IMG/VR virus record: IMGVR_UViG_3300050343_000191
Location: 124,001-188,000 of that record
Strand: one strand, 5' to 3'
Length of the DNA stretch: 64,000 nucleotides
In this document: one piece after another, positions 2,141 through 25,600 of the stretch
Layout of the letters: each line of letters opens with the position of its first letter
Position numbering within the stretch: position 1 is the first letter of the stretch
Translations under genes and position numbers: made by a program
Notes under the pieces: model-generated
The model's input: the letters and a program-made list of their open reading frames with translations, nothing else
Told to the model about the DNA's origin: nothing
The model's database searches: none

Positions 2141-2326
2141 TTAACCTTCTAATTTTGCTTTGAGGTCTGCATTTTCTTCAAGCAAAGCATCAGTTTGTTC
2201 CTTAAAATCTTGTGCCAAAGTTGCTAACTTTGCTTCAAGAAGAACGTTTTGATTTGATACTGCTGCTAATTTAGAATTGTATATTTTAATGAGAACATTA
2301 ACATCCACTTCACTTTGATTTTCCAT
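2141..2326 (-). CDS. Small coiled-coil hypothetical protein
   Basis: 61-aa ORF tightly packed in the structural operon; heptad-like L/A pattern. Confidence 0.75.
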   Translation of the reverse strand: MENQSEVDVNVLIKIYNSKLAAVSNQNVLLEAKLATLAQDFKEQTDALLEENADLKAKLEG

Positions 2327-4051: not shown

Positions 4052-4279
4052 TCAGAAATTGCCTCCGTTGATGTCTAAATTCTGCGTTGCGCCCGGTGTC
4101 AGGGTAAGAGTTGCTTCCCATTTTCTGATGCTGCTGTTATACACAAGCACCATACCATTCTGCAAGTTTGAAGCACTAACATCACTGAGTTCTGCCAAAG
4201 AAAGTCCTTGAGCACCTGCAAGAGAAGATATTACCTTTACTGCTGGTTGTTGACCTACTCTGACTTTAATTTCAGCCAT
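4052..4279 (-). CDS. Small structural hypothetical protein
   Basis: 75 aa; LAELSDV...GMVLVYNSS...KWEA fibre-type repeat; ends LDINGGNF; late promoter just upstream. Confidence 0.75.
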   Translation of the reverse strand: MAEIKVRVGQQPAVKVISSLAGAQGLSLAELSDVSASNLQNGMVLVYNSSIRKWEATLTLTPGATQNLDINGGNF

Positions 4280-4307
4280 TGATTATATACAGATCAGAAT
4301 GTAAATA

Positions 4308-4315
4308 TATTTATA
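4308..4315 (-). promoter_or_regulatory. T4-type late promoter TATAAATA
   Basis: Exact gp55 consensus about 30 nt upstream of the ATG at 4279. Confidence 0.8.
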
Positions 4316-4490
4316 TTCCTTGAAGTCCCAATCCACTCACAACTTCTTGTTGCTTTAGATATAGTTTTGCATATGATTTTGCAATATCTCTCAAAGTATC
4401 ATTATCATCGCAGGAATCAATCTCTCTGGATAATTTTGCATATTCAAAATTTTTAGAAACTTTATCTAATATAATATCATTTGGGTCCAT
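4311..4490 (-). CDS. 59-aa NblA-like helix-loop-helix protein (candidate)
   Basis: Below the track cutoff. Hand translation: MDPNDIILDKVSKNFEYAKLSREIDSCDDNDTLRDIAKSYAKLYLKQQEVVSGLGLQGI. It fills the gap between its neighbours. The size and hydrophobic pattern resemble NblA. Confidence 0.45.
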   Translation of the reverse strand: MDPNDIILDKVSKNFEYAKLSREIDSCDDNDTLRDIAKSYAKLYLKQQEVVSGLGLQGI

Positions 4491-4692
4491 TTGCTATCTC
4501 CCTTAGTAGTGATTTAATTTCTTCAATATCATCTTTAATTGTATCAAGTTCCTCTCTTTCTGTCTGCCTTCTTTTTTTCATTCTCATATATTGAGAATAA
4601 CCGGCACTATCGGTATTAATGATAGCGCCAGTGCTTTTATCTCTGAAGAGATTCTGCTCATTTTCAACCTGTATTAGATCTTTATCTTCCAT
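4477..4692 (-). CDS. Hypothetical protein (likely start MEDKDLIQV)
   Basis: ATG at 4692 lies directly after the upstream stop at 4694; C-terminal coiled coil. Confidence 0.75.
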   Translation of the reverse strand: MEDKDLIQVENEQNLFRDKSTGAIINTDSAGYSQYMRMKKRRQTEREELDTIKDDIEEIKSLLREIANGPK

Positions 4693-4693: not shown

Positions 4694-7600
4694 TTATGCA
4701 AGAGCAATTGCTCTGAAATCTTTCAATTGTACTGGTGTTGATTCATTAGTAGACGACATAACAACTTTAATTGCAAATGCCGTAAACTGATCAACATTAT
4801 TTACACTGAATTGATATTCACTAAATCCTTCTTTATCATCTGCAGCAACAAAAGCATCTGCTCTTCCGCTACTCTTTTCAGGATCAATTATGCGATCTCC
4901 AAATCCATCACCATCATCATCAATTAGATTATCATATCCAGGGAATGGGATAAACTTCTGGTCAATTTCGCTAGAATCTGCTTTAATTAATTGATAAAGA
5001 ACGCGGAAATCTGCATCCTCTTGTCTATTTGCTGCAATATAAATCTTGAGACTTGTTGCAGGTTGTGCAAGAGAAATTTGTTTGGTTACAAATACTGCTC
5101 CGTGAGGATCATTTTCAATTAGATTTGCTCTAGAATCATCAACATAATCTTTTACCGGTGCATTGGATTTGTTTCTACCAAGTATAAATGTTGCATTCTG
5201 AATATCCATTACAGGAGATAGATTTTCATCTTCACTTGTAAATTCAACTCTCATAGATAGTGACTTATTACTTGGAAGCACTCCAAGTCGTTCAATTTCA
5301 TTAACTTTTGAAGCAACCATCCTAGGTGTATCGAAATGTATAACCTTGTTTAAAGTTATTGGTTCAAATCCTTGATCAATAAAGGAAACCTCATTTCCGC
5401 CAGCACTTGTTCCAGATACAGTTCTGATCAAGGAACTTGATTTAGTTCCTTTACCTGGAGTGATAATATTAAACATTGCTTCAATATTACTGAACTGATA
5501 ATTCTGGGAGATTCCAACCGTGTTTCCACCAAATCCTTTTCTAGACTCGAAGTTAATCATTCCAGATCCAGAACCTCTTGAAGTCGGAGATGCTGTGGTT
5601 CTATCAAATTCAATATAATAATTATCTAGATTTGAATTTTCATCAGTATAATATGTTGCTGGGATGTTATGTGAAGTATTAATTCTTGTTAAAGATACTC
5701 CATTAACCTCATAAGGTTGGATGAATTCTCCCGTAGTATGTGAAGACTTAACAGAATTTCCTATTGCTCTGGCATCAATCGATAAAGTGCCCGCATCTCC
5801 TGCTCCAGCACTAATACTATTATAGGAAATGATTTCATTATTAAGAAGTGCATAACCACGACTTGTACTGATTCCTTCAAAGGTTCCAAACAGTGACGTA
5901 TTAGCAACAGCAACTACACCATCAGTTTCTCCGAAAGTTCCTGTGATGGTAGTTTTTCCAGTATCTGGAAGAATGTCCTCAATTGAGATCTTATTATTTC
6001 CACCATGATGTGCATGATTATGTTGCTTGATTCTGAAAATATTTCCACTGTAAATATCATCAATTAAAGTGGATGATCCATTAACAGTAACATCAGCAGT
6101 TACTCTTGTTGCTTCGTTTGAGGGATCTCCATAGTAGAAGAGATTTAGAGTATTTGTGAAGTTTTCTCCTTGAACATTGGTTAAGTAGAGAGTATCTGCA
6201 TTTCCAATTCCAGTAAGAGTAAATCTAGCACCTTTACCTGCTCGTTTTGTTACTGCCATAGTTGACGTAACAATTCCAACAGTTTCACCTTCAACATATC
6301 CAGTACCAACAGTGGTAATATTTACACCTTCAACACTACCAAAAGAGTTAATGGTTAATGTTGCTTTGGCACCAGTTCCTTTACCAGTCAAAGATACTAA
6401 ATCAACATTGGCAATTGATGCACTAGGTTTATAACCAGTACCACTACTTGCAATTGAAACATTCCCTGTTCCAGAAACTGATGGACCACCAAGATTTTCA
6501 ACGATTCCATTAACACTTGGTGCTGTCGCACCTTCAGCAACTTTTACACCAGATATAACACCTGCGTTAAGTGTTCCAGAAACTGGAAGTTTTAATTTTC
6601 TAGGCAAACCTTCGATTGGATTGTCCTCAAGAATAGCAGAGTTATCACCCTTTGGAAGTATGTCACTATTGTAGAAGGTAAGTGCTCCAGAAGGAACAAA
6701 CTTTGCTTTATACAGTTTGAATGTTAAATCTTGATACTGACTTGCAGTCCAAATTGTACCATTCTGAGATTTAAACAGAGAACCGCCAATATATTGCTTA
6801 GTAACAACCACATTTTGAACATCTGGAAGATTTGTTGTTCTAACAGTCTTCTTGCCCATGGTTGCTGTCCACATTTCATATCCATCAGATGCAGGGGATA
6901 AAATAACAATAGCATATTCAGTATCTGCTTCCAGATAAACTGGTGATGGGAATCTTACTCTTGTAGCAACAGGTTCAAATGGATTTGCTTCATTGATATT
7001 AATCTGTTCAGGATTCAATGCAACCTGGGTATAGTCTTGAACCAGGAAAGATGTTGGCGTACCTAACTCCATAGTTCTGAGTTCAACAAAGATTTTTGCG
7101 CCAGGATCTTTTACTGCGAAAAATAGATCAAATGATGTTAGGAAACATCCCTTTCCATCTACAGTAAAGGATTGTGCAAGTGGATCTCTATGCGGTGCCT
7201 TAACTTTAACCTCAACTTCAGTCTTCCTTCTCTTTGGTTTGGGTGGATTTCTAACAGAAACCCGACTAGTCTCTTGTGTCAAGATAGTTCCAGATCCGCT
7301 GTAAGATCCAATTGCCTCAGAAGCAAATACTGTAGATCCAGGAAGAACTACCGTATTTGGTGGAACTGCAGTAACCTTAACTGTTTTAGTTCCACTCTTA
7401 ACTCTTATTGCTGGTCTTGGATTTGAATTTGGATTCCTGAAGAAAAAGTTTGCAATAATATCTCCCCAGTTATCAGAAACTAACTCTGCCCTAGTAATAG
7501 TGCAAACTGCTCCACTAGTCTTTCCAACTACTTTAGCGCCCTTTTCAACGTAACCATAGAATGGTGCGGTTGGGTTTGCAAGCCATCTTACGCCAAAGTT

Positions 7601-10600
7601 AATGAGTTTAGATGTTGGAGAATATGTATCTCCTGGTCCAGGTCTATTTCTATCATATGGATCAACCTGATATTCTTCAACATAAACTGCAGGAGAACCC
7701 AATCCAGCACCAATGTCTGGTCTCGATTTATCACCAAACTTGTGGTTTGGTTTTTGGATTCTCATCACACCAATCTTTCTGCCAGTAGAATCAAAAACAT
7801 CTGCATGTTCATAGATTCTGAAGGTTCCGGATTGCATTTCAATTTCACATACCTTCGGAATAATATCGACTTGCTGACTATCAAGATACAAATAGTGCTT
7901 AGAGTATGGTCTCAGACCATTAGCAGCAAAGAAAACATTTCTTGAGCGCATCCAAGGATCTGCTTCACCAGAAATTTTTACATCTTCAACATAATTAAAC
8001 TCTCTTGCAGGTCCTTTAAGTTTTGGTTTAAACTTAGTTTTGGTTGTAATTGTTGTAGTAGTAAATGCTCTCTTCTTCTTTTCTCCTCTACCACCACCTT
8101 TTTTGTAAGTAACATATTCAGTTTTCTTATCAACATCTCTAGTTACTGTTGCCTCTTGCTTCCACTGAGCACCTGTTGATTCAGTTCTATGATCATCAAG
8201 ATATATTGTTCTGACCCAGTTATCAGATGCTGGATCCAAAACAACACCACCAACAAAAACAATAACATTAAATGGGTTTACATTTTCAACATTAGTAGCA
8301 TGTGGTTGATTTAACCAATCTACTTCTTCATACTTAAGTGTAAGAAGATCTCCAGTTTTCTGAATGTTTGGATCTAATAATTTAAGATTTTGACTAAGAT
8401 CGGTTGTTGTAACATCAATTCCTGGATCTAATGCCAATTCTGCTGCCATAGACCAGAAATCAACAGGTGCAATACACATAGCACCTTCTTTGGATATATC
8501 CACTGTTGACAAACGTGGATCCATCAATGACTTATCTCTAAAGTCACTAACAATAAATCCACTCTTAAATCTACTAAGACCGTTAGCATCTGTTACATCT
8601 AATGTCTTAGTACTCAGTTCGAGAAGAGATAGACTGGTTACTTCTTCTAGGTTTTCAATTCTATCTTCAAGTTTTCCAATATCACGCATCGTGAATCTTC
8701 TATTATCACGAAGAAGAATTTTAGGATCCTTGGTTGCACTATACAAATATGGAGGTAACAGAATTTGTGCAACTTCCATTGCATCATCGGTAAGAACTGG
8801 TGCCTGAGGAGTATCAGCAGGTTCTCCTTTAATAACTTCAATTTCACCCAGACGATTGATGCTAACTAAATCAATTCTAGGTAGATAGTAACTATACCCT
8901 AAGAATGAAGTTTCATCTGGCGAAACAACGTACTTATAATTGTATTCATACTGTCTAATATTAAATGCAAATGGAGACGCATTTGTAGAAGGATCAAACT
9001 CTTTGACTCTAGGTCTGAAGTCTAAGAGATCGGAACATCGTAAACCATTTGGCAATGTTGGGATATCACTGGTAAATCTATCCTGCGAATAGGAATTTAC
9101 AGTGAAAATATCGCCAGTATTATTTGATCCAACTTTATATGAATCAAATACAATTAGCAGTTGTCTAGAAGGTACTGCACTACCCTTTCTTCTAATAATT
9201 CTAGAATAGTCGCAGAATTGATGACGATGACCCTTATCTAATCTATAATTTGCAGTTCTGTCACTGTAACTACCTGGTGTTATTTCTTGAATTACACTCT
9301 CGATGGCAGAATTTTTAAACTTGACGGATTCTCCAACAGAGAAATTATTAGTATTCAGTTTTACATATTCAATACCATTTGCAGTCGTATTTACAACTTG
9401 TGCTACTGCTCTACTATCCTGTCCTACAATTTTTTCACCCACAATCGCATTCTGATCCAAAGAAAGACCAGTTGCAAAAGTCAACTTATCAAGAACAGGT
9501 GCTGCAGTATTAGTTGATTCATAAATTGCACGTACATTTACAACATCAGGTACGTTCAGTGAAATTTCATTATCTTCAATTCTAGTTCCATAGAACTTAG
9601 AAGTTGTAAGACCAACTGTTGAAGTTGCTCCAGTAGTTCTGACAATTGATACCTTATTTGATCTTGCAAAGTCCTTCGTCTTGTTAGTTACACCTCTTTT
9701 CTTTAGAGTTGCCTGGACAGTAACTGCACCATTAGCAAGACCACTGAAAGTTACAGAGTTGCCGTTAGCACCTAATGCAAAGTTTCCACTATTAAGTGCA
9801 ATTGGAGATCCATTATTGTCAGTAATTGTATATCTCTCAGCATCAAATGATTCAAAGAATACACTAGTAATTCCTGCACTTACATCTACAGCATCAGCAA
9901 CTTGCAAAGTGAGAGTACCACCTGCAACAGTCTGACCTGTAATCTGTTTCGTAATTGTAAGATCAGCATTTGCTAAGTCAACAGTTGCAGTATTCTCTAC
10001 TGGCATTGTTGCGTAGAGACCATTTGATCCGTATTGGCGGATTCTTGGAACCATCAATGAGAAATTATATTGACCATTATCTACACTGCTTTTGTTTACA
10101 CCACCAACAGCTGTTGGTGCTGCTCCTAAAGTTACTGCAGTTCCATCAGCACGGATTGCATTGACAACATTAAAGTTTGGATCTCCACCTGTTTGGTACT
10201 TAATTATACTACCAAGTTTAATACCACCCTCACCATCTTGGAAGTTTCTTCCAGAAACTTTACCAGTATTACTGCCACTGATAACTAACTGATCCTTTAC
10301 ACCAAATCTTTCAAGCTCTTGCTCATAAAGAACAGTATCTGCAACGAAATTTGTAAGTAAAGCACTATTTAATCCGTTAGAATCTTGGAATACTGATTTA
10401 ATATCTGAAGTATCATAGATTGCCATCCCTGTGATACCAGTCTTAAATTTAGGATTCTCATTGATGATTACTTGCTCACCAATTAAAAATCTTCCCGAAG
10501 TCTGAGTAAGACTATAATCATTGGTTGCAATAACTGAAACATACCCAGTTGCACCACTAGACAAACCTCTAATATATGAAGTGACAGGTACGTCACCAGT

Positions 10601-12103
10601 GGTATATGCGTTTGCTAAAGTTAATTTTGTATATGTTTGAATATCATAGAGATAGAGATCCCAATTAGTTGATCCATCTTTATAAGAATCATCCGTCACA
10701 CCCCACCAGTAAACTCTTGCCTCACCAACCTTAGTTGATAATCCGGCACCAGATGCATTACCAGTGTTGGTATTTCCTGATGCATTTCTCCTTTCAGAGT
10801 ATAATTCAATAATATTAGTGTTAGTAGTATTTGCACCACCTGCTGCAGCGTCACCAATATTTAAATATGGTGTTCCATGAACATTGTTTACTCTTACTAA
10901 ACTTCCAAGAGCAAATGGAATCAGCGCACCACCTACTGTTTTAGTAGTTCTTGGTTTTTCTACATCAATTATACTAGAACCAACAAGATCAATATCATAT
11001 CCTTTAACGTAGGCAGTGCCAGCAGACACTCTAACACCCATCAAATTGTCGCTAGGTGTATTCCCTTCATCAGTTACTTCATCCTCTCTGAAGAGACCTC
11101 CGTTGCCAGTCTCATTGTTTAAAGTGTCAACAACATCTACAATAAAACTATCAACAGCATAATTGCCAGATTCTTCGTAAGTTCTCTTTGCAAAGTAATC
11201 TCTAATCAAATTATAATTTGATTTATTCTGTAACTTTTTAATTTCACCTTCATCAATTCTTACCAACTCAACAAAACTAGTGTCTTCATTATCAGTGAGT
11301 TGTTTTTTAGTTAATTTAAGTTGAATTTTTAATCTATCTGCACCTGGTGCAGCATAGTTAGTAAAACCTTTTGCATTATCATTTAGTTTTGGATCTTGAT
11401 CTGCATTTACAATTTCCTCAATAATATCATATCCAACTCTGAACGATGGTTTATTATCAAAAGGATCAAGAACAATCTGTTCATTTGGAACATCAACAAA
11501 AGTTCCTCTAATAAAATATACACCTTCTGCTACACCGACAGAATAACCTGTATTTGTTGCATTTACTGAATTAATGGTAAAAACAGTATCGCCAGAGACA
11601 ATAGAAGTATTTCCATACGTTATATTCTCTTGAAGAATTAGAGTTTCACTATCTTCAAACTCAAAACTTGTACCATCGACGCCACCATCTTGATACTTAA
11701 CAAATAGTGTAATTTCTTCAACACCTTCTTCAGGAGGAAGTAAATATCCTTTGATTGTTCCGACAATCTCCGAGTTTTCCCCCTTTACCTTGGATCCCTT
11801 ACCATTATTTGCATTTATAACAGCATCCAAATATACTGTAATATCAATTCCTAAGTGGTCTCCATTAACCTTAACCGTAGTAAAGGCATTATCACAAGTG
11901 ATTCCTCCAGGAATCACCATGGAACCTTCTTTGAACATATGACTGCCAAAGGATTCTATCTGATTTTGCAGAATCGACTGAAGACCCGATAATTCTCTAG
12001 CCTGAACAGGATACCCAGGTTTAAACAGAACTTTGTAAAAATTATCTGCCTTATCAAAATCATCATAATAAGGACTTACGTTTAAATTCGTCTTTTGTGG
12101 CAT
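4694..12103 (-). CDS. Large virion structural protein, DUF4815/VrlC-like (2469 aa)
   Basis: N-terminus MPQKTNLNVSPYYDDFD...YKVLFKPGYPVQARELSGLQSILQNQI; internal DFRP, LPRID and RFKSGFIVSDF motifs; HRDPLAQSF; lies downstream of gp8. Confidence 0.85.
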   Translation of the reverse strand: MPQKTNLNVSPYYDDFDKADNFYKVLFKPGYPVQARELSGLQSILQNQIESFGSHMFKEGSMVIPGGITCDNAFTTVKVNGDHLGIDITVYLDAVINANNGKGSKVKGENSEIVGTIKGYLLPPEEGVEEITLFVKYQDGGVDGTSFEFEDSETLILQENITYGNTSIVSGDTVFTINSVNATNTGYSVGVAEGVYFIRGTFVDVPNEQIVLDPFDNKPSFRVGYDIIEEIVNADQDPKLNDNAKGFTNYAAPGADRLKIQLKLTKKQLTDNEDTSFVELVRIDEGEIKKLQNKSNYNLIRDYFAKRTYEESGNYAVDSFIVDVVDTLNNETGNGGLFREDEVTDEGNTPSDNLMGVRVSAGTAYVKGYDIDLVGSSIIDVEKPRTTKTVGGALIPFALGSLVRVNNVHGTPYLNIGDAAAGGANTTNTNIIELYSERRNASGNTNTGNASGAGLSTKVGEARVYWWGVTDDSYKDGSTNWDLYLYDIQTYTKLTLANAYTTGDVPVTSYIRGLSSGATGYVSVIATNDYSLTQTSGRFLIGEQVIINENPKFKTGITGMAIYDTSDIKSVFQDSNGLNSALLTNFVADTVLYEQELERFGVKDQLVISGSNTGKVSGRNFQDGEGGIKLGSIIKYQTGGDPNFNVVNAIRADGTAVTLGAAPTAVGGVNKSSVDNGQYNFSLMVPRIRQYGSNGLYATMPVENTATVDLANADLTITKQITGQTVAGGTLTLQVADAVDVSAGITSVFFESFDAERYTITDNNGSPIALNSGNFALGANGNSVTFSGLANGAVTVQATLKKRGVTNKTKDFARSNKVSIVRTTGATSTVGLTTSKFYGTRIEDNEISLNVPDVVNVRAIYESTNTAAPVLDKLTFATGLSLDQNAIVGEKIVGQDSRAVAQVVNTTANGIEYVKLNTNNFSVGESVKFKNSAIESVIQEITPGSYSDRTANYRLDKGHRHQFCDYSRIIRRKGSAVPSRQLLIVFDSYKVGSNNTGDIFTVNSYSQDRFTSDIPTLPNGLRCSDLLDFRPRVKEFDPSTNASPFAFNIRQYEYNYKYVVSPDETSFLGYSYYLPRIDLVSINRLGEIEVIKGEPADTPQAPVLTDDAMEVAQILLPPYLYSATKDPKILLRDNRRFTMRDIGKLEDRIENLEEVTSLSLLELSTKTLDVTDANGLSRFKSGFIVSDFRDKSLMDPRLSTVDISKEGAMCIAPVDFWSMAAELALDPGIDVTTTDLSQNLKLLDPNIQKTGDLLTLKYEEVDWLNQPHATNVENVNPFNVIVFVGGVVLDPASDNWVRTIYLDDHRTESTGAQWKQEATVTRDVDKKTEYVTYKKGGGRGEKKKRAFTTTTITTKTKFKPKLKGPAREFNYVEDVKISGEADPWMRSRNVFFAANGLRPYSKHYLYLDSQQVDIIPKVCEIEMQSGTFRIYEHADVFDSTGRKIGVMRIQKPNHKFGDKSRPDIGAGLGSPAVYVEEYQVDPYDRNRPGPGDTYSPTSKLINFGVRWLANPTAPFYGYVEKGAKVVGKTSGAVCTITRAELVSDNWGDIIANFFFRNPNSNPRPAIRVKSGTKTVKVTAVPPNTVVLPGSTVFASEAIGSYSGSGTILTQETSRVSVRNPPKPKRRKTEVEVKVKAPHRDPLAQSFTVDGKGCFLTSFDLFFAVKDPGAKIFVELRTMELGTPTSFLVQDYTQVALNPEQININEANPFEPVATRVRFPSPVYLEADTEYAIVILSPASDGYEMWTATMGKKTVRTTNLPDVQNVVVTKQYIGGSLFKSQNGTIWTASQYQDLTFKLYKAKFVPSGALTFYNSDILPKGDNSAILEDNPIEGLPRKLKLPVSGTLNAGVISGVKVAEGATAPSVNGIVENLGGPSVSGTGNVSIASSGTGYKPSASIANVDLVSLTGKGTGAKATLTINSFGSVEGVNITTVGTGYVEGETVGIVTSTMAVTKRAGKGARFTLTGIGNADTLYLTNVQGENFTNTLNLFYYGDPSNEATRVTADVTVNGSSTLIDDIYSGNIFRIKQHNHAHHGGNNKISIEDILPDTGKTTITGTFGETDGVVAVANTSLFGTFEGISTSRGYALLNNEIISYNSISAGAGDAGTLSIDARAIGNSVKSSHTTGEFIQPYEVNGVSLTRINTSHNIPATYYTDENSNLDNYYIEFDRTTASPTSRGSGSGMINFESRKGFGGNTVGISQNYQFSNIEAMFNIITPGKGTKSSSLIRTVSGTSAGGNEVSFIDQGFEPITLNKVIHFDTPRMVASKVNEIERLGVLPSNKSLSMRVEFTSEDENLSPVMDIQNATFILGRNKSNAPVKDYVDDSRANLIENDPHGAVFVTKQISLAQPATSLKIYIAANRQEDADFRVLYQLIKADSSEIDQKFIPFPGYDNLIDDDGDGFGDRIIDPEKSSGRADAFVAADDKEGFSEYQFSVNNVDQFTAFAIKVVMSSTNESTPVQLKDFRAIALA

Positions 12104-12106: not shown

Positions 12107-13666
12107 TTAAAATTCCAGTATAATTTTGAGGTCTTCTTTTTGGCGGGCATTTCTAGCAATGCTAGATCTGTTGTCAAGATAAATTAATTCTCCTGACCCT
12201 TTATTTATTTCAGGAACTGCCATGCCACTGGTGAAGTCAACACCAAGATTAATTAACTTTGTTCCTGTTGGGTTTGTTGTGATTCCTGCAAATCCAGTAT
12301 CGATGGAAGCGGAAAAATTAGATACATTACCACTGATTACATTTGATGATGCTTCAAAATCATATGGTCTACCATTTGTAGATATACCCGCATAATCTCT
12401 TTGATTAAAGGTTGTCTGGTTATAGAAGAGAGATCTGTCTCTAAAATACTTTAAAACCTTTGTCTCAAGATCATATGATGCAACATAACCAAATGCCTTT
12501 CCAGTTCCACTAGAAACAATCTGTTCAATCTTCTCTCCAATTTTTGGTGTTCCTGTAATTGAAGAAAATTTGAAAGAACTTAATCCGGAGAAAGTATTTT
12601 CTTGATATACATCACTAGTTCCAACTTTTGTTGGATTCTTTACGATACCAACTTGTGCAAAACTTGTATCAACTGGGAAATCTTTTGTGGAATCGTCAAA
12701 TCTTGCATAAACAAGAACTTTATCAGTACCCAATTCAGTGTACACATCAAATCCATGACCCTTTGATGGGGGAATAATGGGTATTAAATGTGCCGGAGTA
12801 CCAGTACTGCCTGAATTAATTGATCCCAAGTCAACTAATGCATAACTATAGTCTTTTCCCCCAGAAGTAACTGTAGTATTTGTAATGCGTGTACCTTCTA
12901 CATCAACTCTAACTTTTGCTCCAGTACCATCACCAATAATATCAAACTCTTGTCCCAAACCATTTGCATATCCTTTACCAGATGCTTGAATATAAACAGT
13001 CTTAATCTGATTTTCATTAATACTTGAGTCGGCAGATTCCCTAATAGTTCTTATTTGAGATTCTGTACTAGTTTGCCACTCATTGGGTACTGTGAGATAT
13101 TCTGTAGAATCAAATTTAATAATGTCACTTGGAGGAATAGTAAATAGATATTTCCAAATATATCCGTCTCCACTATCACCAGCTCTAGTTGGTTCTAGAT
13201 CTGTAAATTTTGGTTGATCCTGAGAAACATTTCCTTTTGGATTATCACCACTAGATCCATTTTCAATACAAATATAAACTCTATAGTCTTCATTCATCAC
13301 ATAATAATTTGCATCATATAATCTAGATGCATTAGTTATGGGTGCTGGACTAGTAATGCTATAGTCATCACGATATATTTCATATCTGCTTCCAGAGACC
13401 CAATTAATACGTCGGACTAATCGTCTTACATTGGCAGAAGTTACCTTCTTACCATATAAAACAAGATCACCTGCATGGTTGTTATAAGCAACACTATCAA
13501 TTGGGGATGGTGGATTGGTATTCCAAGCAACTGTCCTACCAAAACCAACATTAGTTGGGTTGGGTAGACCAACTGTGATATAGTAAGAGTTACTCGTGGA
13601 TTCAACAGAATCCACAAAGTTACTGGCATTCAAAATTCTAAATTGATCAGTAACAATTGCTGACAT
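12107..13666 (-). CDS. gp8: Baseplate wedge subunit gp8
   Basis: MSAIVTDQFRILNA; W..G..Y..Y; YRVYICIENG; DGYIWKYLFTI; C-terminal ELIYLDNR...RQKEDLKIILEF. Confidence 0.9.
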   Translation of the reverse strand: MSAIVTDQFRILNASNFVDSVESTSNSYYITVGLPNPTNVGFGRTVAWNTNPPSPIDSVAYNNHAGDLVLYGKKVTSANVRRLVRRINWVSGSRYEIYRDDYSITSPAPITNASRLYDANYYVMNEDYRVYICIENGSSGDNPKGNVSQDQPKFTDLEPTRAGDSGDGYIWKYLFTIPPSDIIKFDSTEYLTVPNEWQTSTESQIRTIRESADSSINENQIKTVYIQASGKGYANGLGQEFDIIGDGTGAKVRVDVEGTRITNTTVTSGGKDYSYALVDLGSINSGSTGTPAHLIPIIPPSKGHGFDVYTELGTDKVLVYARFDDSTKDFPVDTSFAQVGIVKNPTKVGTSDVYQENTFSGLSSFKFSSITGTPKIGEKIEQIVSSGTGKAFGYVASYDLETKVLKYFRDRSLFYNQTTFNQRDYAGISTNGRPYDFEASSNVISGNVSNFSASIDTGFAGITTNPTGTKLINLGVDFTSGMAVPEINKGSGELIYLDNRSSIARNARQKEDLKIILEF

Positions 13667-13683: not shown

Positions 13684-13691
13684 TATTTATA
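13684..13691 (-). promoter_or_regulatory. T4-type late promoter TATAAATA
   Basis: Exact consensus 18 nt upstream of the gp8 ATG. Confidence 0.8.
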
Positions 13692-13696: not shown

Positions 13697-16600
13697 TTAC
13701 TGAATGTAAAATGACAAGTTGTTATCGGCTTCCAGACTTACACCATCAGCGCGTGGTTTTCTGGAACGTATTGCTCCAGTTTTGCCTTCACCAAAGTTTC
13801 CTCTCCTTTGGATAGTTGGGAAGGTTGATAATCCAGCATCAACAGTCAAACCAGTCACCCCAATAGAAATTCCATTAGTTCTATTGTCATAGTTATATAT
13901 TCTTCCCCAAGAAAGTTTTCCAAGAGAAGTTGTTAATCCTGCCTGAAGATCATCAAAAGTGCCGCTTTCGAGTATTCCAATTACAGGACTACCGGAATCA
14001 ATATTACAAATAATTTCTGCATTCGATGCAAGACTTGTTATTGAGTTGACAACATAAACGTTATCAAGGAATGACGTACCAATACCAACAACTGCAGAAT
14101 CACTACTATTTACAGAAGTAACTCCATTACCAACTGTGGTATCATAAATCATAATGGGATATCCCGCTACCAAATCCAGTGCATCAGAAGCAACATTTGC
14201 TTCACCATTTTCACCATAGTCTTTCATTGCGCGGAAGTTAAACTTCAATGCAAGTGGATGTCCACCTGTACCAGTTGTTGTACTGATTCCAGTAATAATT
14301 CCACTAAATCCTTGAACATTTTGAACTGTATTGATAGTTTCATATAGAGGTGTGGGAAGTTCTGCAATAATTCTTGGTGGATTTGTATTTGTATATCCAA
14401 ATCCAGGATTGATAACTGTAACTGAAGAAACTTGACCATTTGAAATATTGGCAGTTCCAGTTGCAGTGATTCCAATACCAACACCTATTTCTTTGGGTGC
14501 CGAGAACTTAATATCAATTGTAGAAGTTGTATATCCAAATCCGACATTATCAATGGTTACTGCGGAGACAGTGCCTGCAATGGAAACTGTAGAAGTAAAC
14601 GCAGCAGAAACTGGTTCATTTGAAGTTTCCATCATAAATGCATCGAATGTAAATGTATTCTGATTAAGATCCAGAATAATTTCGTCGTAATCAAAGAATT
14701 GTGCATTATCTACAAAGATATCACTTGAAGTTGGAGTAACATCACCAATGATTTTTGCAGTTGGGAAGATCTTAGTTTCTAAGACTGGTCTTACCTTACT
14801 AACAATATCACCCTTTACATAGATATCTTTCTTCTGTTTAATCCAATCAAATGGTCTGAAGTTAGTATCATCAACACCTGGACCACTATAGATGTTAGTT
14901 TCTACAATATCAGAACCTACAATTTCGGTGATTGCCCTATCATTAATTTGTCTTTGAGATGTTGAAATTAGTGGTTGTCTCAACATTCTTACATCATCAC
15001 CAATCTTGAGAGTCTCAGTGGTTTCTACCTGAAGAACATCAACACCATCTTGACCAATGTAGAAGAAAATATCAACTTTATCATTGACCTTAGGTGCTTC
15101 CATAAACAAGAATGAAGTTCCACCAGTAAACTGATATGCATAACCAGGTGTCTGCAATACACCATTAATGAAGATGACAAGAACTGAGTCAAGATCAATA
15201 TTTGCAGAAAGAGGGTTATTTGGATCTAATTCAAAACTTAGAAGTTCGCCATTATAGTAAAGTGGGAATCTCTTTCTAGTACCGTTTTGATATCCAAAGA
15301 TGCTGTCAATATAATCCATTTCACCAAAGGACCAGGAAGAGAACCTATCAGTAAATGTTTCAACAACTTCAAGTTGGAAAGGTGCTATTGGTTGTGTATA
15401 ATTTTTTGCTGTTACTAGACCAACAGCTTCAAGAATATCGCCAGGTTTGAATGCATATCCAGATCTTGCAACCTTAAAAGTATCAATTAAGAATAATGTA
15501 GATCCAATACCAACATTACTTGTTCCTGCTGCACCCACAGTAAGATTTAACAGTAGATTTCTACCAGTTTCAGTTGTTGCACCAATACCCAGTCTAGAAA
15601 CGCCAACAACTTCTACATTCTCATAGTTTGGTTCGGGAATGATCAATGCTGGATTGATATATCCCTGACCAGGATTTGTGATTGAAAATGCTAAAGTTCC
15701 ACCAATACCAACGGTCGCATCAACTACTGCACCAGTTCCACTACCACCAGCAGATCCAACACCAACACTAATTGTATTAGTGGTGAATGATGTAATTCCT
15801 AGAGTTGCTCCTGCAGCAGGATCAGTTGCTCTTGGATATGGTTGCTCAGTAAAGAAATCATCATCAGAGCAAGTAAAGATCAAACCATCTGTTGCAATCT
15901 GAACAGTATCCGTAGTATCCAAACCGTGACTTGGAATAGTAAGTCTCAATACGCCTGTATGAGAAGTGTAATCTGCTTTAGTTGGTGTAAATGGTCCACC
16001 ACTACTTGCAGTAACACTATTGTTCACAGATCTGATGAACTTGTGTTCGTATGCTAGATCTGTAATACCGATAGAAACTGGTTCTCTATATCCAGATCCA
16101 AAATTATTGGTAAAGTATCTTCTAACGGTACCACCAGTCTCATAAGTATGTGGAATTGTAGATGGACCCACTCTGATTGAAACTCTGGTTGCAGAAATTA
16201 CCTGAACAACATCAACAGGATAATCATAATCTGGGAAGATAGTTGTTGTACCATATCCAGTGCTACCACAACTAAATTCCAAATTATCCAGTTTTACAAA
16301 ATCTCCACCTAAGATGTTGTGAGAGTCATTGGTTTCAATTTCAAGGATTCCTGTAATATTGTTATAAAGTGCTGTAGAGATAGCAACTGTAGATCCAACT
16401 GTATTAATACCGATGAGGTCAGTAAGTTGACCTGTAGAATTTTTCAGAACTTTAATTTCTGCACCAAGCAAGGGTGCATATCCAAGACCAGGAGTAGAAC
16501 CTAAAGAAACAATCAGACCACCTCTTGGGAGTTGATTTTGATTAATATCAAAATCAGATTGAATAAATGATCCATCTACAGAAGTAATACCTGTGTAAAT

Positions 16601-19600
16601 TACACTCGTGACTCCTACTGCACTATCATTATCAATTTCATAGTTATTTCCTGCATTATTTTCAGTGGTGGGAGTTTGGAATACGCCATTAATAAACAGA
16701 ATACCATTACCAGCATCGATACCAGTAGTATTAGCACCGCCAACTTTCAATGTATATGTCTTACCAATTCCTGTGAAGGAATCTGAAATATCATCAAATA
16801 CCATATTGGTGTCATAATCAGATCTTAGGAAAGTTCTTCCAGAGAATTGTGCAGTTACATATGGGAGATTACTTTCATTTCTTCTTGCTCTATTATTACC
16901 TTTTGGTGGATCAATGAAGTGAACTTCGTTTCCAACAATATTGAGAGCACCCCTGTAGATTTGAATAGTTGATCCATCAATGTGTGATGTTGCTGCAGAT
17001 CCAACAGCACCTCTCTGTACAGCGACTGTTGGGAATGTTGCAGCAACACCAGCAGCAATAAGACCGTTAATAGGACCAAGAATTTGACCACCAATATTTG
17101 TGCTAAGACCAACCTCAACAACCTTCATATACTCATCATCAACTCTCAAAAGGTCTCTTGGTTGGACGGAAGAAATGCCAGTAACATTAAATGTCGAAAT
17201 ACCTACAGAGATTCCTCCACTATTAAAATCAAGTTTATGATTAATTGGGGTAAATGTTATTGGTTGTTGTACAATACCATCAATAGCAATGACAGTTTTA
17301 CTCAACTTCTTAGTAAATTCTAGTTCATGAGCATTTCCGATTCCCGCATCAGTGAAGGTAACGGATATACCTGCAGTAGCGAACTGTGGCGTTGTCGATA
17401 ATTTAAATGTATCTGGAGTTAGGGCAATTGGATAAACTCTATCTGGTAGTTTATCTGTTACAATACCAAGATGGTTTACAGTTGCACCAATTCCCATCGG
17501 TTGTGTTCCAATGCCAATAAAGGTTGAAGTTGGTCTGTAAATTAATTCTTCTCCAGTATTAAAGAAATGATCTCTTAATGTGAATACACCTGTTGAATAA
17601 TTGATATTAACAGTATCTGTAGGATCAAATGTCTTCACATAAATTGGTTTACCTTCATGAGTCAATGTAAAGTTGGTTCTATTTGCTCTTAGACCATTAA
17701 GTCCATCAAATGCAGAGAGGAATACCAACTGATCAGTTGGACCGTATGAAAGTGAATTTGCTTGGTTATCAAAGTCCATCTCTCTGTAGAAGACTTCACT
17801 AAATGCTTGTGCCTCTACATTGTATCCCAAGTCTGGATAGAAATTGAGATAGAACTGATTACCACTGATCTCTCCACCAAATGTACCAAGACCAGTAACA
17901 TTATTAACTGGTGCAAATGGTCCAGGAGTGACAGTAACTTCACTAGTTCTTGAATTTGAAAGAATGTTGACTTGATGGATTGCTGATGTTGTTCCTGCAG
18001 AAACACGAACGACTGCTGCTGCAGCAGAAATGAATCTGCTATCAAAAGTTCCAACTCTTACTATATCAGTACCAAATCCAATAGTTGATTCTAATCTTGC
18101 ACTTCTTTCTGTTCCTGCAGGTTGATTGTTAAGAAGGAATCTATATGTTCCGATTCCAGTTGTGGTATTTCCAAATCCAACAATATGTGTTCTATAATCA
18201 AAAGCATCAACCTGATCAAAATTACGACCACGTACAGAAACAATACCTGAATTAGCATCATAAATTGCACTAACAAGTCCAACATTTGATGCACTATAAG
18301 ACTGTGTAGTATGATCAAAATAATACTCACTTACATAAGTATTAGTTCCATCAAAATCAATTGCAGCTTCAACATAGTTAGTTTCTCCACTAAATCTATT
18401 GGAAATCTCAATGTTTGCAAATAATCCATTGAAATCAGTACCATTGAATTCTGCAAGTGTTCCAATATTATTACCACCGGATACACTAGAGAGACCAACA
18501 AAAGAACTGACAAGATTTACAGAACCGATTGCTTGAGTACCAATACCAGAATTTCCGGGAGGAAGTGCTTGGAAAAGATAGGATTTTTTGAGTACTTTGA
18601 TATCATGATCAGTTTCAAAGGCATCTGTTGGAGTAAAGACAAGAGTCTTTCTTCCAAAACTATCAATATTTGCACTAAAGTCCCCAAGTTTAATATTTGT
18701 AAACGAATTATATTTTTCAAATATAAAAATATCATTGGTAGTTGATTGAACAACTAATTCGGATAACTGAACATCTTTACTGTCTGGATCAGCAATTTGT
18801 ATGACATATCTTACATGATTATCTACAAAATCGATCTCTTCAATTTCAACGAAAGTATCCTTAAATCCTCTACTAGAGAACTTATTACTAATATCATCAT
18901 GAATGAGAACCCTATTAGTTCTACACTCAATATAATCCGTCAACTTTCTATTCTGAATCTGTAGAGCGTTTGATTGCGTAAGACCAGTAACAGGACTTAC
19001 TCTTGGATCAACATCTACTGCATTATCGAAGTTGTTGATAATATCAACTCTTCTTTCACTAACAACATCAAGAATTACAATTGCCGTAGTTGTTCCACCA
19101 AGACCAATACCACTTCTACCAACAGAAGTTACACCAACATCAGCAAAGTTCTTAAGACCTGCTGGGTGAACAATACTGTTTACTGGGGTAGAAAGTTCAT
19201 CCCAAGTTATGGGACTCTTAATAGAGTATGAAAGATTCTGATAATAGTCATTGTTAGGAGTTACTTGATAATCTTCACTAATTTTGCCAACATCATCACT
19301 CCAACCAAGTTCCATTCTTGAGGAGTAATCAACTACAAATTTTGCCCTCTTTCTATCAATATTAGTTACTTCTGCAATTACACCACTAATAATCCCTTTA
19401 ATAATATCACCTTTATTAAGATTATATTTTCCAGTATATTTGATGTAATCATCTCTCACTAGAGAAATAAATGCATCTTCAGAACGGAATCCATTGCCAT
19501 CACTATTAACAAATAGTCTTTCATTCTTAGTGAATGTTCCCCTTTTTTGTTTGATATCAATGCGTGGATAGATGTTCTCATTGATAAGAGTTGCATATCC

Positions 19601-22600: not shown

Positions 22601-25600
22601 ATTATTGTATAAGTAATCTTCTTTGAAGAATCCTGGTTCAAAAGTAGGTGGTCTATCAACAATAGAATTAGTGCTTAATTCATATCCAGTTTCAAGTCTA
22701 GCAACACCTGACTGAACATTATCTGCCGTTTGATATCCAAAGGGACCATAAATTGGATTTCCGTCATATGCCCATCCAATAATGGGTGAGTGAGATCCAT
22801 TTAAAGATTCAAAGTTCGATGCAAGATCTTGGGAGTATCCATATATTCCATAAACCAAAGAATCCTGCTTCTCATCCTTGTAAAGACTAGAATAAATTTC
22901 TGGACTTCTTGTTGCGGAAATTTTTCCAAATCTAAACGCATCGTTTATTGTTAAATCTCTAATTCTAGTATCAAAAATTGCACCAGATCCTCTAGAATCT
23001 ACAAATATTGAAGTAGAAGATGTGCTATACCCAATACCCGGATTAATGACAATAACATCATCAATCTTTCCATTTAAAAGTACGGGTCTGAGAATTGCAC
23101 CTACTCCACCAGAAGGATCTTCAATTTTAAGTTCTGGGATTGACTTATATTCAGATCCTTTGTTTAATACTTGAACATCAACAATTCTTCCATTAGAAAT
23201 AATTGGTGCAAGTTGAGAATTTTTACCTTTACTTATTGAAATTCTTGGTTTTGTATGTAAATTGAATACAGTAGATCCATATCCAGTTCCAGATTCATAC
23301 AAATAGGCATCAGTAATCTCACCAGTTACGATTGGTGTAAAGGTAAAGGTTCCAATACCAGATGCTCCAAAAGAAACATTAGCATTAACTTTAATCTCTG
23401 GATATTGGAAAATATGGTAACCACTTCCAATAGAATCAAATTTATTAAACTTTGATTTTTTGAGATCATCGGTAAATGTTCCAGCAATACCAACATTTAC
23501 AAGTCTAAATTGATCTGAATCTACAAATTGAATAGAATAACTATTTGAAGTAGAAAGACCAACAATGGGATTGCCTGTTGATTTATATGTAACTATTTCT
23601 CCATCCTTAAATCCATGATTATTAAAGTATACTGAATTATACTCTGTAGAAATACCACTAGATTTTACGCTTAATTTTCTGTAAGCATAACCAGATCCAC
23701 TATTGAGAACAGTAATAGATCTTACATTTTTTTGCGATAGAGTTCTAAATTTATGAATACCAGATGCTGATGTAGCAGCTGAAAGACCAATAGTATTGAT
23801 ACCAGTACTTATAGTGGTAATACCTGATGCAGAAGGTGCAAATGCATCATTATCATTTTTAAATAATCTAATAGTGGAAGTATTTACAATTCTAATTACA
23901 TATTCATCACCACTACTCAAACCTCCTGTTGAGATATTATTTGGATCGTATGCTTGTCCAATCTCAATAGGATTATTACCATTTTGATTGTAGATAATAT
24001 GCTCACCATCTGCAAGATTATGTGCCTTTGTAAATGTAATGGTTTCATTACTAGGATCAATTCCGCCACCAACATCTAGTCTACGACTGTCAAAAGATAT
24101 CTCTCTAAATCTTGTTCCAATAACTGGTTCCAAGGAACAACCAGATCCATTACCACCTATCAAATCTAGAGATAGGAATTCATCAAATCCAAATTCTTGA
24201 GGGTCAACAATAACTTGTTTAACATTACCAATAACAACTGGTTCAACCTTTGCACCAGTTCCAAGAGGAAGACCAGATCCAACCTCTGCAACATCTTCAA
24301 TATTTAATTCTGGTGGATTTATAACATCATATCCTTTACCACCATTAAGAACTTCAAATTCCTCTACAGGTCCATAATAAATTTTATCCCTGGAATCAGG
24401 ACTTACAATCTCTACACCATCAATCAATACTCCAACATTACTTACAGTCCTATCAACACTTTTACTACCTTGTAGTTGCTGTGATAATGGGAACTTTCTA
24501 AGAATTTTTTTACTTGAAAGAGTTCTATTTTCATGTCTCTTTAAAGTAAAATTATGTGCTCCAGCACCAAAGTTTGGATTAAATCTAGCAATATCATCAA
24601 AGTTTGCAATAGTTTTGGCGTTATTGGCAAGTTGAGACTTTGAAGCGTATAGTTTAATTTCGTTTGCAGCAACGAGTTTTACAAAATAACTTTCTCCAGA
24701 TGAAAGTCCAATTAAAGGACTTTCTGCGGTGTAGACTATTTCATCACCATCTCTAAAATCGACTGGTGTTGAAAATACAATTGTTCCATAAGTCTTATAA
24801 TAAGAATTGTAACCACCCAATCCTTGAGTATTGTTTGAGCCTACTGTTTTAATATATCCATCTGGAAGTATAGACTCAATAATATCATCTTTAATAGTAT
24901 ATCCTGGAAGAGAATTTGATGCCAAATACCCAAAGATTGCGAAATCGTCTACGTAAATATTGGATGTATTTGCAAGATATACTTCATTACCTACAGTAAG
25001 AACTACTCCAGAACTCTTTGCCTTTACAATCTTTCGTCTAATACTGTAATCTTTATTAGGATCTGGTGTAAAAGTACCAATATTGGATAGAGTAACTTCT
25101 TTGGTTAATGTGTTTATTGAAGACACTGTTGCAAATGATGCATTAGCAACATTTGGATCAGGTACAACTACTTGTTGACTATCGCCAATGAGAACCTCAA
25201 CAGAATCTCCTAGTTTAAGAAATGCCTTATCAATATCAGAAAATAGTGTGAATACAGAAGAATTTACTTCCTCCACTTTAAATCTTGGACTGGTATTATA
25301 AATCCAAGAATTAGCAAACATTTGCTTATAAGTCCTATCAACGACAGGATTCTCAATAACCTCACCAACATTTCTTGTAGTTATTTCCTCATCTTCTTCC
25401 ATCAGAGGAATATCTACCAAAGGTTTTAATTCTGATAGAACTCCAGTGATTCTCATATCACATCTATTTTCAATATCACCATCCTCATAACCAAAAATGG
25501 TTTCATCTGCTCTTACAACATCAGAGATATTAATTTTTGACGTGACACCAGTACAACCATAAAACTGATTAATACTCTTTGAAGTATAATCAATTCTATT

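What the first reader, a model, noticed from the sequence alone, without database searches (positions are those of the whole stretch)
4311..4490. Unannotated NblA-like ORF embedded in the late structural operon
This 59-aa ORF was missed by the track. Its pattern L-x5-F...helix...L-x-D-I...Y-L-K-Q-Q-E-V aligns by eye with S. elongatus NblA (LSVEQQFDLQKYRQQVRDISREDLEDLFIEVVRQKMAHENIF). NblA is the adaptor that targets phycobilisomes for proteolysis. A copy among baseplate and neck genes would mean antenna dismantling is timed with virion assembly, possibly to supply amino acids.
Basis: partly seen in the sequence, partly recalled or inferred. Interest (0 to 1): 0.65.

Follow-up and report, generated by a model that had tools for sequence, protein, structure and literature searches.

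The report
Cyanophage NblA-type gene in structural operon
The 59-codon gene is real and belongs to the NblA family of small adaptors that mark the cyanobacterial light-harvesting antenna for degradation, but this myovirus branch has already been predicted in print, so it is a new member of a known kind.

Summary
The ORF at 4311-4490 (minus strand, 59 aa) exists and is a conserved gene. It matches PHROG 27081 (E 5e-29), has 224 clusters of relatives at 50% identity, and shows dN/dS of about 0.22.

Pfam PF04485 gives no hit, and a direct profile-profile comparison with canonical NblA gives only P 0.007.

A bridge settles the homology:
- The phage family profile finds small multi-copy ORFs in 95 of 121 picocyanobacterial genomes.
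- That host family matches the phage family at 98.4% probability (E 7e-15).
- The host family matches canonical NblA at 94.8% (E 5e-8), as strong as the validated T7-like cyanophage NblA control.

The predicted fold is a short-long helix hairpin. The three solved NblA chains rank 2, 3 and 7 among 48,161 chains. A homodimer is predicted (0.48 against 0.00 in controls).

The gene sits between the GC112 and GC113 genes of the neck and baseplate module. The Prochlorococcus phage P-SSM2 has the same array without it. It overlaps its upstream gene by 14 nt, has its own ribosome-binding site, and ends in a late-promoter-like TATAAATA.

Homologues in S-SM2, Bellamy and S-SCSM1 were published as predicted NblA in 2022. 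Activity and late timing remain inferred.

The parts
4311..4490 (-). NblA-type CDS, 59 aa plus TAA stop. Predicted helix 1 spans residues 11-25 and helix 2 spans residues 30-54.
   Evidence: ORF; family; fold; dN/dS 0.22; homology to picocyanobacterial NblA paralogues and through them to canonical NblA
4498..4504 (-). Shine-Dalgarno-like AAGGGAG, 7 nt upstream of the ATG, inside the 3' end of the upstream gene
   Evidence: read directly from the sequence
4477..4490 (-). 14-nt overlap between the start of the ORF and the end of the upstream GC112 gene (TGA at 4477-4479). The same overlap is seen in S-SM2, Bellamy and S-SRM01. In 19 of 26 IMG/VR loci a stop codon lies at nt 12-14 of the ORF in the upstream gene's frame. 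Some loci whose upstream gene is a different one show the overlap too.
4308..4315 (-). TATAAATA, the T4-type late-promoter consensus. It overlaps the stop codon of the ORF and lies 29 nt upstream of the GC113 start. An NATAAATA motif lies near the stop in 22 of 26 related loci. In P-SSM2 the equivalent motif sits at the end of GC112.
   Evidence: motif identity from PMC2984593
4477..4707 (-). Upstream gene GC112, a small virion structural protein homologue (phrog_473, E 1.5e-19; 52% identical to P-SSM2 PSSM2_116). Its true start is probably the ATG at 4692.
4052..4279 (-). Downstream gene GC113 (75 aa; 79% identical to P-SSM2 PSSM2_117). In P-SSM2 it follows GC112 directly.
4694..12103 (-). 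VrlC-like 2469-aa structural protein, further upstream in the same gene string
13684..13691 (-). TATAAATA 18 nt upstream of the 519-aa ORF. It is the nearest strong late-promoter-like motif upstream. With AATAAATA at 12202-12209 it is the likely start of the transcription unit that ends with the NblA-type gene.

Best explanation
The ORF encodes a phage copy of NblA, the small proteolysis adaptor for the phycobilisome. It belongs to the divergent branch of the family that marine picocyanobacteria (Synechococcus, Cyanobium, Prochlorococcus) carry in several copies per genome.

Shown here:
- It is a conserved gene under purifying selection.
- It is homologous to these host paralogues and, through them, to canonical NblA.
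- It is predicted to fold as a short-long helix hairpin and to form a symmetric homodimer through helix 2. This is the four-helix-bundle arrangement described for solved NblA.
- It is an accessory insertion between two conserved structural genes.

Inferred, not shown:
- Like cellular NblA and the validated S-TIP37 phage NblA, the dimer binds phycobiliprotein subunits and the ClpC chaperone. The host Clp protease would then strip the antenna, freeing amino acids and cutting light harvesting.
- In this phage it is made late. It has no promoter motif of its own, overlaps the upstream structural gene, has its own ribosome-binding site, and is the last gene before the next late promoter. It would therefore be co-transcribed with the 519-aa, VrlC-like and GC112 structural genes.

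I put homology to NblA at about 0.93. The confidence below is for the whole statement, activity included.
For: Real gene:
- phrog_27081 at E 5e-29.
- 224 representative clusters.
- dN/dS 0.22.

Homology:
- The phage-family profile A3 hits 52-85-aa ORFs, 1-7 per genome, in 95 of 121 picocyanobacterial genomes. Per-genome E-values go down to 5e-10.
- A3 against the host family A5: 98.4%, E 6.9e-15.
- A5 against canonical Pfam-positive NblA (A2): 94.8%, E 5.1e-8 over 64 columns.
- Positive control: the validated T7-like cyanophage NblA family against A2 gives 95.7%, E 8.4e-9.
- BLASTP of the ORF against a Synechococcus WH7803 ORF: 40% identity, E 2e-10.
- The host profile finds only this ORF in the phage genome, at E 5.8e-13.
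- 2 of 30 host members hit PF04485 directly, and the host profile hits PDB 1ojh (NblA) at E 0.02.
- Direct A3 against A2 is collinear over 48 columns at P 0.007. Only 1 of 200 column shuffles reaches that score.

Structure:
- AF2 model with pLDDT 83.6, helices 11-25 and 30-54.
- The nearest Pfam-bearing cluster by language-model features is NblA.
- Homodimer ipSAE 0.48 against a best control of 0.00. The three runs agree in at least 97% of their contacts, and the partner's pLDDT is at least 74. That mark is reached by 20 of 30 proteins solved as pairs of one chain and 1 of 23 solved as single chains. The interface pairs residues 33/37/40/44 with themselves.

Literature:
- HHpred gives 95-97% to NblA for the S-SCSM1, S-SM2 and Bellamy homologues.
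- Picocyanobacterial NblAs are known to escape general profiles (PMC12695635).
- NblA is about 60 aa, a helix-loop-helix, a four-helix bundle of dimers, and a ClpC adaptor (PMC7966870).
- Deleting nblA in S-TIP37 lengthens the latent period and lowers production of morphogenesis proteins.

Accessory character:
- P-SSM2 has GC112 and GC113 adjacent, without the gene.
- Other phages carry it elsewhere.
Against: - Pfam PF04485 does not match the ORF, any of 60+82 family members scanned, or the whole phage genome.
- The family profile does not hit NblA chains in the PDB by sequence.
- Foldseek finds nothing.
- The family shows no detectable similarity to the validated T7-like phage NblA family (P 0.6).
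- The invariant E-Q of the canonical LEQQF motif is S-K here.
- No member of this myoviral branch, and no individual picocyanobacterial paralogue of this type, has been shown here to degrade phycobilisomes. One marine phage NblA (G1b) failed to complement.
- Transcription and timing are not shown. RNA-library contigs cover 4134-4450 at 100% identity, but this may be carried-over DNA.
- The absence from Prochlorococcus-phage records is not statistically meaningful (0 of 24 at a 5% background rate).
Confidence: 0.62

Rival explanations
1. It is an NblA homologue with a diverged role. The phage protein would pair with one of the host's several NblA paralogues, or compete with them. This would redirect, delay or block antenna degradation, or retarget it to particular rods, rather than acting as a self-sufficient adaptor.
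For: - The family derives from the multi-copy picocyanobacterial paralogues, not from canonical NblA.
- NblA1/NblA2 heterodimers are essential in Synechocystis (reference).
- A marine phage NblA (G1b) did not complement alone and was suggested to need a partner.
- The same genome carries psbA and psbD, which sustain photosynthesis.
- The canonical E-Q motif is lost.
Against: - A confident homodimer is predicted.
- Every phage NblA tested so far promotes degradation.
- Nothing here specifically indicates antagonism.
Confidence: 0.2
2. It is a small helical assembly factor or minor component of the virion module. Its resemblance to NblA would reflect only a common two-helix hairpin.
For: - About 60 of the 80 best IMG/VR loci have it directly after GC112, a virion structural protein, with overlapping reading frames. 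Most of the rest lie between g16 and g17, also in the morphogenesis module.
Against: - Sequence homology to host chromosomal NblA-type genes is strong and does not depend on fold. Those genes match canonical NblA.
- The closely syntenic phage P-SSM2 builds virions without it.
- S-TIM5, S-SKS1 and S-B05 carry it among small accessory ORFs.
- The S-SCSM1 homologue is not among the virion proteins named from mass spectrometry, while its neighbours are flagged as virion proteins.
Confidence: 0.05
3. It is not a functional gene, but a chance ORF or a decaying remnant.
For: It is short, Pfam gives no hit, and one related locus (L161) has a premature stop three codons from the end.
Against: - dN/dS is 0.22.
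- There are hundreds of conserved relatives with 14 invariant positions.
- It has its own Shine-Dalgarno sequence and a conserved length.
Confidence: 0.01

Closest known systems
Predicted NblA of T4-like and related cyanomyoviruses: S-SCSM1 ORF237, S-SM2 SSM2_101, Bellamy gp115, S-SRM01 gp198, S-SKS1, S-B05/B43, S-TIM5, S-SCSM2R 'NblA'
   Same: It is the same protein family, at 43-61% identity over the full length. S-SM2, Bellamy and S-SRM01 have the same position after VrlC and GC112, with the same 14-nt overlap. These homologues were published as HHpred-level NblA homologues.
   Different: This copy comes from an uncultured 231-kb phage whose neck genes are closest to S-SKS1, S-SRM01 and P-SSM2. 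The downstream neighbour here is GC113, as in P-SSM2, rather than the GC211 tail-fibre assembly gene of S-SM2 and Bellamy. None of these proteins has been tested experimentally.
Picocyanobacterial NblA paralogues (small multi-copy ORFs of marine Synechococcus, Cyanobium and Prochlorococcus, for example four in WH7803)
   Same: Sequence homology is direct: 40% identity at E 2e-10, and profile-profile 98.4%. Six of the eight most conserved host positions (F, R, I, D, L, A) are identical in the ORF. The size is the same. In a quick tree the phage clade groups with them, apart from canonical NblA.
   Different: The phage sequences form one separate clade (SH-aLRT 99) with its own invariant K-L-Y-L-K-Q-Q-E stretch in helix 2. 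They are phage-borne, single-copy and in a structural operon.
S-TIP37 NblA (T7-like cyanophage), experimentally validated (Nature 2025, PMC12695635)
   Same: It is a phage-encoded NblA of a marine Synechococcus phage, and is the expected functional analogue: antenna degradation that speeds infection and supports synthesis of late proteins.
   Different: There is no detectable direct similarity. The T7-like family keeps LEQQF, matches canonical NblA strongly, and groups with canonical NblA in the tree. Its gene lies after the exonuclease gene in the DNA-metabolism region, not in a structural operon.
Canonical cyanobacterial NblA (Pfam PF04485; PDB 1OJH, 2Q8V, 3CS5) and freshwater phage NblA (Ma-LMM01)
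   Same: Both are about 60 aa and form a helix-loop-helix with a predicted dimer. The solved chains are among the top structural matches. The alignment is collinear, with the conserved F in register.
   Different: The ORF falls below every sequence threshold against the Pfam model. The E-Q of the N-terminal motif is replaced. The link is only transitive.

Membership tests
NblA (PF04485 sensu stricto) | Score above the Pfam gathering threshold (25 bits) for PF04485 | tested here: not met
   There is no hit for the ORF, for 60 and 82 family members, or for the six-frame phage genome at E<=10. This criterion is operational. The same model misses all NblA genes in Synechococcus WH7803 and many members of the validated T7-like phage family. 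The literature says marine NblAs escape it.
NblA (PF04485 sensu stricto) | N-terminal L-x-L-E-Q-x-F motif (L, E and Q invariant and F nearly invariant in 38 canonical sequences) | tested here: not met
   In the hhalign register, I6 aligns with the invariant L and F15 with the conserved F, but E-Q is S12-K13 (K13 is invariant in the phage family). The picocyanobacterial paralogues also vary at these positions.
NblA superfamily (broad sense, including picocyanobacterial paralogues) | Significant profile-level homology to bona fide NblA | tested here: met
   The link is transitive. Phage family to host family: 98.4%, E 6.9e-15. Host family to canonical NblA: 94.8%, E 5.1e-8. The positive control gives 95.7%. 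The direct comparison gives only P 0.007. Published HHpred values for orthologues are 95-97%.
NblA superfamily (broad sense, including picocyanobacterial paralogues) | A single domain of about 60 aa folding as a helix-loop-helix with a shorter first and a longer second helix | tested here: met
   The protein is 59 aa. The AF2 model has pLDDT 83.6 with helices of 15 and 25 residues. 1ojh_A, 2q8v_A and 3cs5_A rank 2, 3 and 7 of 48,161 chains, aligned over 48-52 residues at rmsd 2.7-3.2. No usable negative control was obtained.
NblA superfamily (broad sense, including picocyanobacterial paralogues) | A dimer forming a four-helix bundle | tested here: met
   This is a prediction only. ipSAE is 0.48 against a best control of 0.00. 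The three runs agree in at least 97% of their contacts, and the partner's pLDDT is at least 74. The interface is symmetric helix 2 to helix 2, plus helix 2 to helix 1. The mark is reached by 20 of 30 proteins solved as pairs of one chain and by 1 of 23 solved as single chains. The property is described for NblA in PMC7966870.
NblA superfamily (broad sense, including picocyanobacterial paralogues) | Binds phycobiliproteins and ClpC, and its expression causes phycobilisome loss (bleaching) | not testable with these tools
   This needs expression, complementation and pull-down experiments.
Cyanophage auxiliary metabolic gene of host origin | Homologues in host chromosomes, patchy presence among related phages, and a variable genomic position | tested here: met
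   Host homologues occur in 95 of 121 genomes. The gene is present in 25 of about 464 cyanomyovirus records. It is absent from the syntenic P-SSM2. At least four different contexts were seen.
Virion structural protein | Detected in purified particles, or conserved with the structural core | tested here: inconclusive
   It is not part of the conserved core, since P-SSM2 lacks it. The S-SCSM1 homologue is not among the named virion-proteome proteins, though small proteins are easily missed. No proteome exists for this phage.

The most novel reading that the evidence does not exclude
The myoviral NblA clade is an independent capture of the divergent picocyanobacterial NblA paralogue type, separate from the canonical-type NblA of T7-like cyanophages. 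It is wired into a late structural transcription unit. It would act at the end of infection with a different specificity or mode, for example on phycoerythrin rods or as a partner or competitor of host NblA paralogues. That would give T4-like cyanophages, which otherwise sustain photosynthesis through psbA and psbD, a timed switch from maintaining to dismantling the antenna.
Probability: 0.15. Interest if true: 0.6.

Novelty: new member of a known kind. Interest (0 to 1): 0.3.

Why it matters
Phage NblA has recently been shown to shorten infection and to lower light harvesting by oceanic cyanobacteria, but only for T7-like podoviruses. T4-like cyanomyoviruses are equally abundant, and their NblA-type genes rest on prediction alone.

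This window adds a well-supported member. It shows that the myoviral branch descends from the host's own divergent paralogues. It also points to a preferred insertion site behind GC112, with a conserved late promoter after it.

That gives a concrete, testable timing hypothesis in cultured carriers with the same layout (S-SM2, Bellamy, S-SRM01). It also serves as a caution for annotation, because standard Pfam scans miss the whole branch, and the host paralogues too.

Tried and rejected
- Pfam scans of the ORF, the family members and the whole genome gave no NblA hit.
- phmmer and hmmsearch of the ORF and the family profiles against PDB sequences gave nothing relevant.
- Foldseek against the PDB found nothing.
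- The ESM Atlas structure search returned only the family's own clusters, one auto-named after the S-SCSM1 annotation. That is not independent evidence.
- A direct hhalign against canonical NblA was weak. Merging canonical and T7-like NblA into one profile made it weaker. hmmsearch with canonical NblA HMMs against family members gave at most 12 bits.
- The phage family compared with the validated T7-like NblA family showed no similarity.
- A word search seeded with Ma-LMM01 NblA returned only close relatives. A scan of genome contigs with it found nothing. Canonical NblA sequences were instead collected through a psbA-anchored route.
- The phyletic argument that only Synechococcus phages carry the gene was rejected as underpowered (0 of 24 Prochlorococcus-phage records at a 5% background rate).
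- Expression could not be shown. RNA-library contigs cover part of the ORF at 100% identity, but they are scattered, shallow and could be DNA. They give no start, strand or timing.
- The sigma-70-like promoter scan around the ORF was at chance level, and no terminator was found.
- The negative structural control, the neighbouring 61-aa ORF, folded as one long helix and was unsuitable. It was not searched.
- A weak A3 match in P-SSM2 (14.5 bits) lies in the conserved DUF1825 gene between gp59 and gp32 and was judged not to be a family member.
- A borderline match of the host profile to PDB 9y6u 'Gp77' (E 0.019) could not be traced in the literature.
- Papers on NblA mutational analysis (Dines 2008, Baier 2014, Nguyen 2017) are not held, so no residue-level functional comparison was made.

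Full report
**What is there**

The minus strand of the window carries an ATG-to-TAA ORF at 4311-4490 that encodes 59 residues. The window is bases 124001-188000 of a 231,085-bp IMG/VR virus record judged complete. That genome also carries psbA and psbD, so it is a cyanophage. Its neck protein gp13 is closest to those of S-SKS1, S-SRM01, P-SSM2 and P-SSM5, at 70-76% identity.

All neighbouring genes are on the minus strand. In the direction of transcription the order is:
- a 4315-aa protein
- a 519-aa protein
- a VrlC-like 2469-aa protein
- a 76-aa homologue of a small virion structural protein (T4-like gene cluster GC112; phrog_473)
- the ORF
- a 75-aa protein (GC113)
- a 571-aa structural-like protein (GC114)
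- a 61-aa protein
- gp13 and gp14

This order rests.

**It is a real gene**

- The ORF matches phrog_27081 (function unknown) at E 5e-29.
- It has 145 relatives in the word search.
- It has 224 representative clusters at 50% identity in the exhaustive HMMER search.
- It has more than 420 relatives in IMG/VR.
- Fourteen positions are invariant among 60 relatives.
- Pairwise dN/dS among 26 full-length copies has a median of 0.22.
- An AAGGGAG ribosome-binding site lies 7 nt before the ATG.

**Direct tests of the NblA idea are negative or weak**

- Pfam PF04485 does not match the ORF, any scanned family member, or the six-frame genome.
- Sequence searches of the PDB find no NblA.
- Foldseek finds nothing.
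- I built a reference alignment of 38 Pfam-positive NblA sequences (A2) from cyanobacterial genomes and Ma-LMM01-type phages.
- hhalign of the phage family against A2 gave 3.5% probability with a shallow alignment.
- A more diverse alignment (A3) gave 5.3% probability and P 0.0073, now collinear over 48 columns.
- Only 1 of 200 column shuffles reaches that score, and reversed profiles score lower. For a single pre-stated hypothesis this is suggestive and no more.
- As calibration, the family of the experimentally validated S-TIP37 NblA (A4) matches A2 at 95.7%, E 8.4e-9. It shows nothing against the phage family under study.

**The bridge**

I searched the A3 profile against 121 genomes of the family of Synechococcus WH7803.
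- Matches appeared in 95 of the 121 genomes. There were one to seven per genome, in open frames of 52-85 aa, with per-genome E-values down to 5e-10.
- An alignment of 30 of these host ORFs (A5) matches the phage family at 98.4%, E 6.9e-15.
- Independently of how it was collected, A5 matches canonical NblA (A2) at 94.8%, E 5.1e-8 over 64 columns. This is as strong as the validated control.
- The ORF itself is 40% identical to a 58-aa WH7803 ORF (E 2e-10). It shares six of the eight most conserved host positions.
- The host profile finds exactly one place in the phage genome, this ORF, at E 5.8e-13.
- Two host members hit PF04485 directly, and the host profile ranks PDB 1ojh (NblA) second of 177,635 sequences.

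This agrees with the literature. Picocyanobacterial NblAs are so divergent that a dedicated profile was needed to find them (PMC12695635). Marine phage NblAs score poorly against Pfam. The ORF is therefore a member of the NblA superfamily, on its picocyanobacterial branch.

A quick maximum-likelihood tree on 68 columns places the phage sequences as one clade (support 99). That clade groups with the picocyanobacterial paralogues and lies apart from canonical NblA. The T7-like phage NblAs group with canonical sequences. This suggests two separate captures, but the alignment is short and the tree is unrooted.

**Structure**

- AlphaFold2 with the family alignment gives a confident hairpin: pLDDT 83.6, helices 11-25 and 30-54.
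- The nearest Pfam-bearing cluster by language-model features is also NblA. This is a lead only.
- A homodimer is predicted, with ipSAE 0.48 against 0.00 for the best of three controls. The runs agree in at least 97% of their contacts, and the partner's pLDDT is at least 74. That mark is reached by 20 of 30 proteins solved as pairs of one chain and by 1 of 23 solved as single chains. The interface is a symmetric pairing of helix 2 with helix 2.
- This matches the four-helix bundle of dimers described for NblA (PMC7966870). It supports dimerisation but does not show it.

**Context and likely timing**

- P-SSM2, a Prochlorococcus phage, has the same array: VrlC-like, then GC112, GC113, GC114, GC115, gp13 and gp14. 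There GC112 and GC113 are separated by only 28 nt, and a CATAAATA motif sits at the end of GC112. A profile search of the whole P-SSM2 genome finds no true member. The ORF is thus an insertion between two conserved structural genes.
- In the window it overlaps the end of GC112 by 14 nt. Its stop codon is embedded in TATAAATA, 29 nt before the GC113 start.
- NATAAATA is the accepted late-promoter motif of cyanomyoviruses (PMC2984593).
- Near the stop, 22 of 26 related loci have such a motif. In 19 of 26 a stop codon lies at nt 12-14 of the ORF in the upstream gene's frame, the same 14-nt overlap.
- On this strand no such motif lies between 12202 and the ORF. The next ones upstream are at 12202-12209 and 13684-13691, before VrlC and before the 519-aa gene.
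- The simplest reading is that the gene is the last cistron of a late transcription unit. This is an inference.
- Contigs from RNA libraries cover 4134-4450 at 100% identity, but they cannot prove transcription or timing.

Across the 80 best IMG/VR loci:
- about 60 share the position after GC112;
- 17 lie between g16 plus a variable gene and g17, as in S-SCSM2R. This is inside the g15-g18 hyper-variable region known to collect host-like genes.

In S-SCSM1 the gene precedes a helicase gene. In S-TIM5, S-SKS1 and S-B05 it lies among small accessory ORFs. Late co-expression may therefore hold for this layout but is not a property of the family.

**Comparison with what is known**

The tblastn hits of the ORF are the same genes that a 2022 paper lists as HHpred-level NblA homologues at 95-97% probability. 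They are in S-SCSM1, S-SM2, Bellamy, S-SKS1, S-B05, S-B43, S-SRM01 and SynMITS9220M01. The S-TIM5 gene was predicted earlier.

None of these has been tested. The experimental evidence for marine phage NblA concerns an uncultured lineage and T7-like phages. In S-SCSM1 the homologue is not among the named proteins of the virion proteome.

**Verdict**

The NblA reading is supported at the level of homology (about 0.93), predicted fold and predicted dimer. Activity as a phycobilisome proteolysis adaptor is the most likely function (about 0.6 for the whole statement) but is untested for this branch.

The main rival is a diverged role in concert or competition with host paralogues. A virion-assembly role is unlikely. 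The finding is a new member of a known, already published kind, and its interest is modest.

Noticed in passing
L239-L242 (Synechococcus WH7803, G001:C1 near 812 kb, 845 kb, 895 kb and 1540 kb) and L227-L258: Picocyanobacterial genomes carry one to seven small NblA-type ORFs each (95 of 121 genomes searched). These include genomes of 1.3-1.8 Mb, the size of Prochlorococcus, which lacks typical phycobilisomes. The Pfam NblA model misses all of them in WH7803.
   Followed up: partly
window 4308-4315, 13684-13691, 28982-28989, 33886-33893 (all minus strand): All four exact TATAAATA motifs in the window are on the gene-coding strand. Three were checked and lie 18-29 nt upstream of structural gene starts. 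The overall count is not above chance (4 found against 5.9 expected), but the placement looks like T4-type late promoters.
   Followed up: partly
window 13697-26644 (-) and 4694-12103 (-): Two giant ORFs of 4315 aa and 2469 aa (the latter VrlC-like) make up a third of the first 27 kb. They are presumably virion or fibre proteins.
   Followed up: no
window 2141-2326 (-): The 61-aa ORF between GC114 and gp13 (the GC115 position) is predicted, from a single sequence, as one continuous 59-residue helix with pLDDT 95. It looks like a coiled-coil element of the neck module.
   Followed up: partly
L146:3264-3677 (S-SKS1 SWZG_00226): The S-SKS1 homologue is annotated as a 137-aa protein, but only its C-terminal 52 residues match the family. 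This is either an N-terminal fusion or an over-extended start.
   Followed up: no
L262:344-676 (P-SSM2 PSSM2_007, DUF1825, between gp59 and gp32): The phage-family profile gives a weak match (14.5 bits, E 0.006) to this conserved cyanophage DUF1825 gene. It is probably chance, but DUF1825 is also a small helical protein shared by cyanobacteria and cyanophages.
   Followed up: no
PDB 9y6u chain IA 'Gp77', residues 133-177: The host NblA-type profile (A5) has its best PDB sequence hit (E 0.019) in this 227-aa multi-copy protein, just ahead of NblA 1ojh. I could not identify the entry in the literature.
   Followed up: partly
L161:132-308 (IMGVR_UViG_3300023170_000758): One relative has an in-frame stop three codons before the usual end. 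This fits the C-terminal tail (residues 55-59) being dispensable.
   Followed up: no
G000:C1:26808-29059 (outside the window): The same phage genome carries adjacent psbD and psbA genes. The phage would then both sustain photosystem II and, if the NblA reading is right, dismantle the antenna.
   Followed up: no
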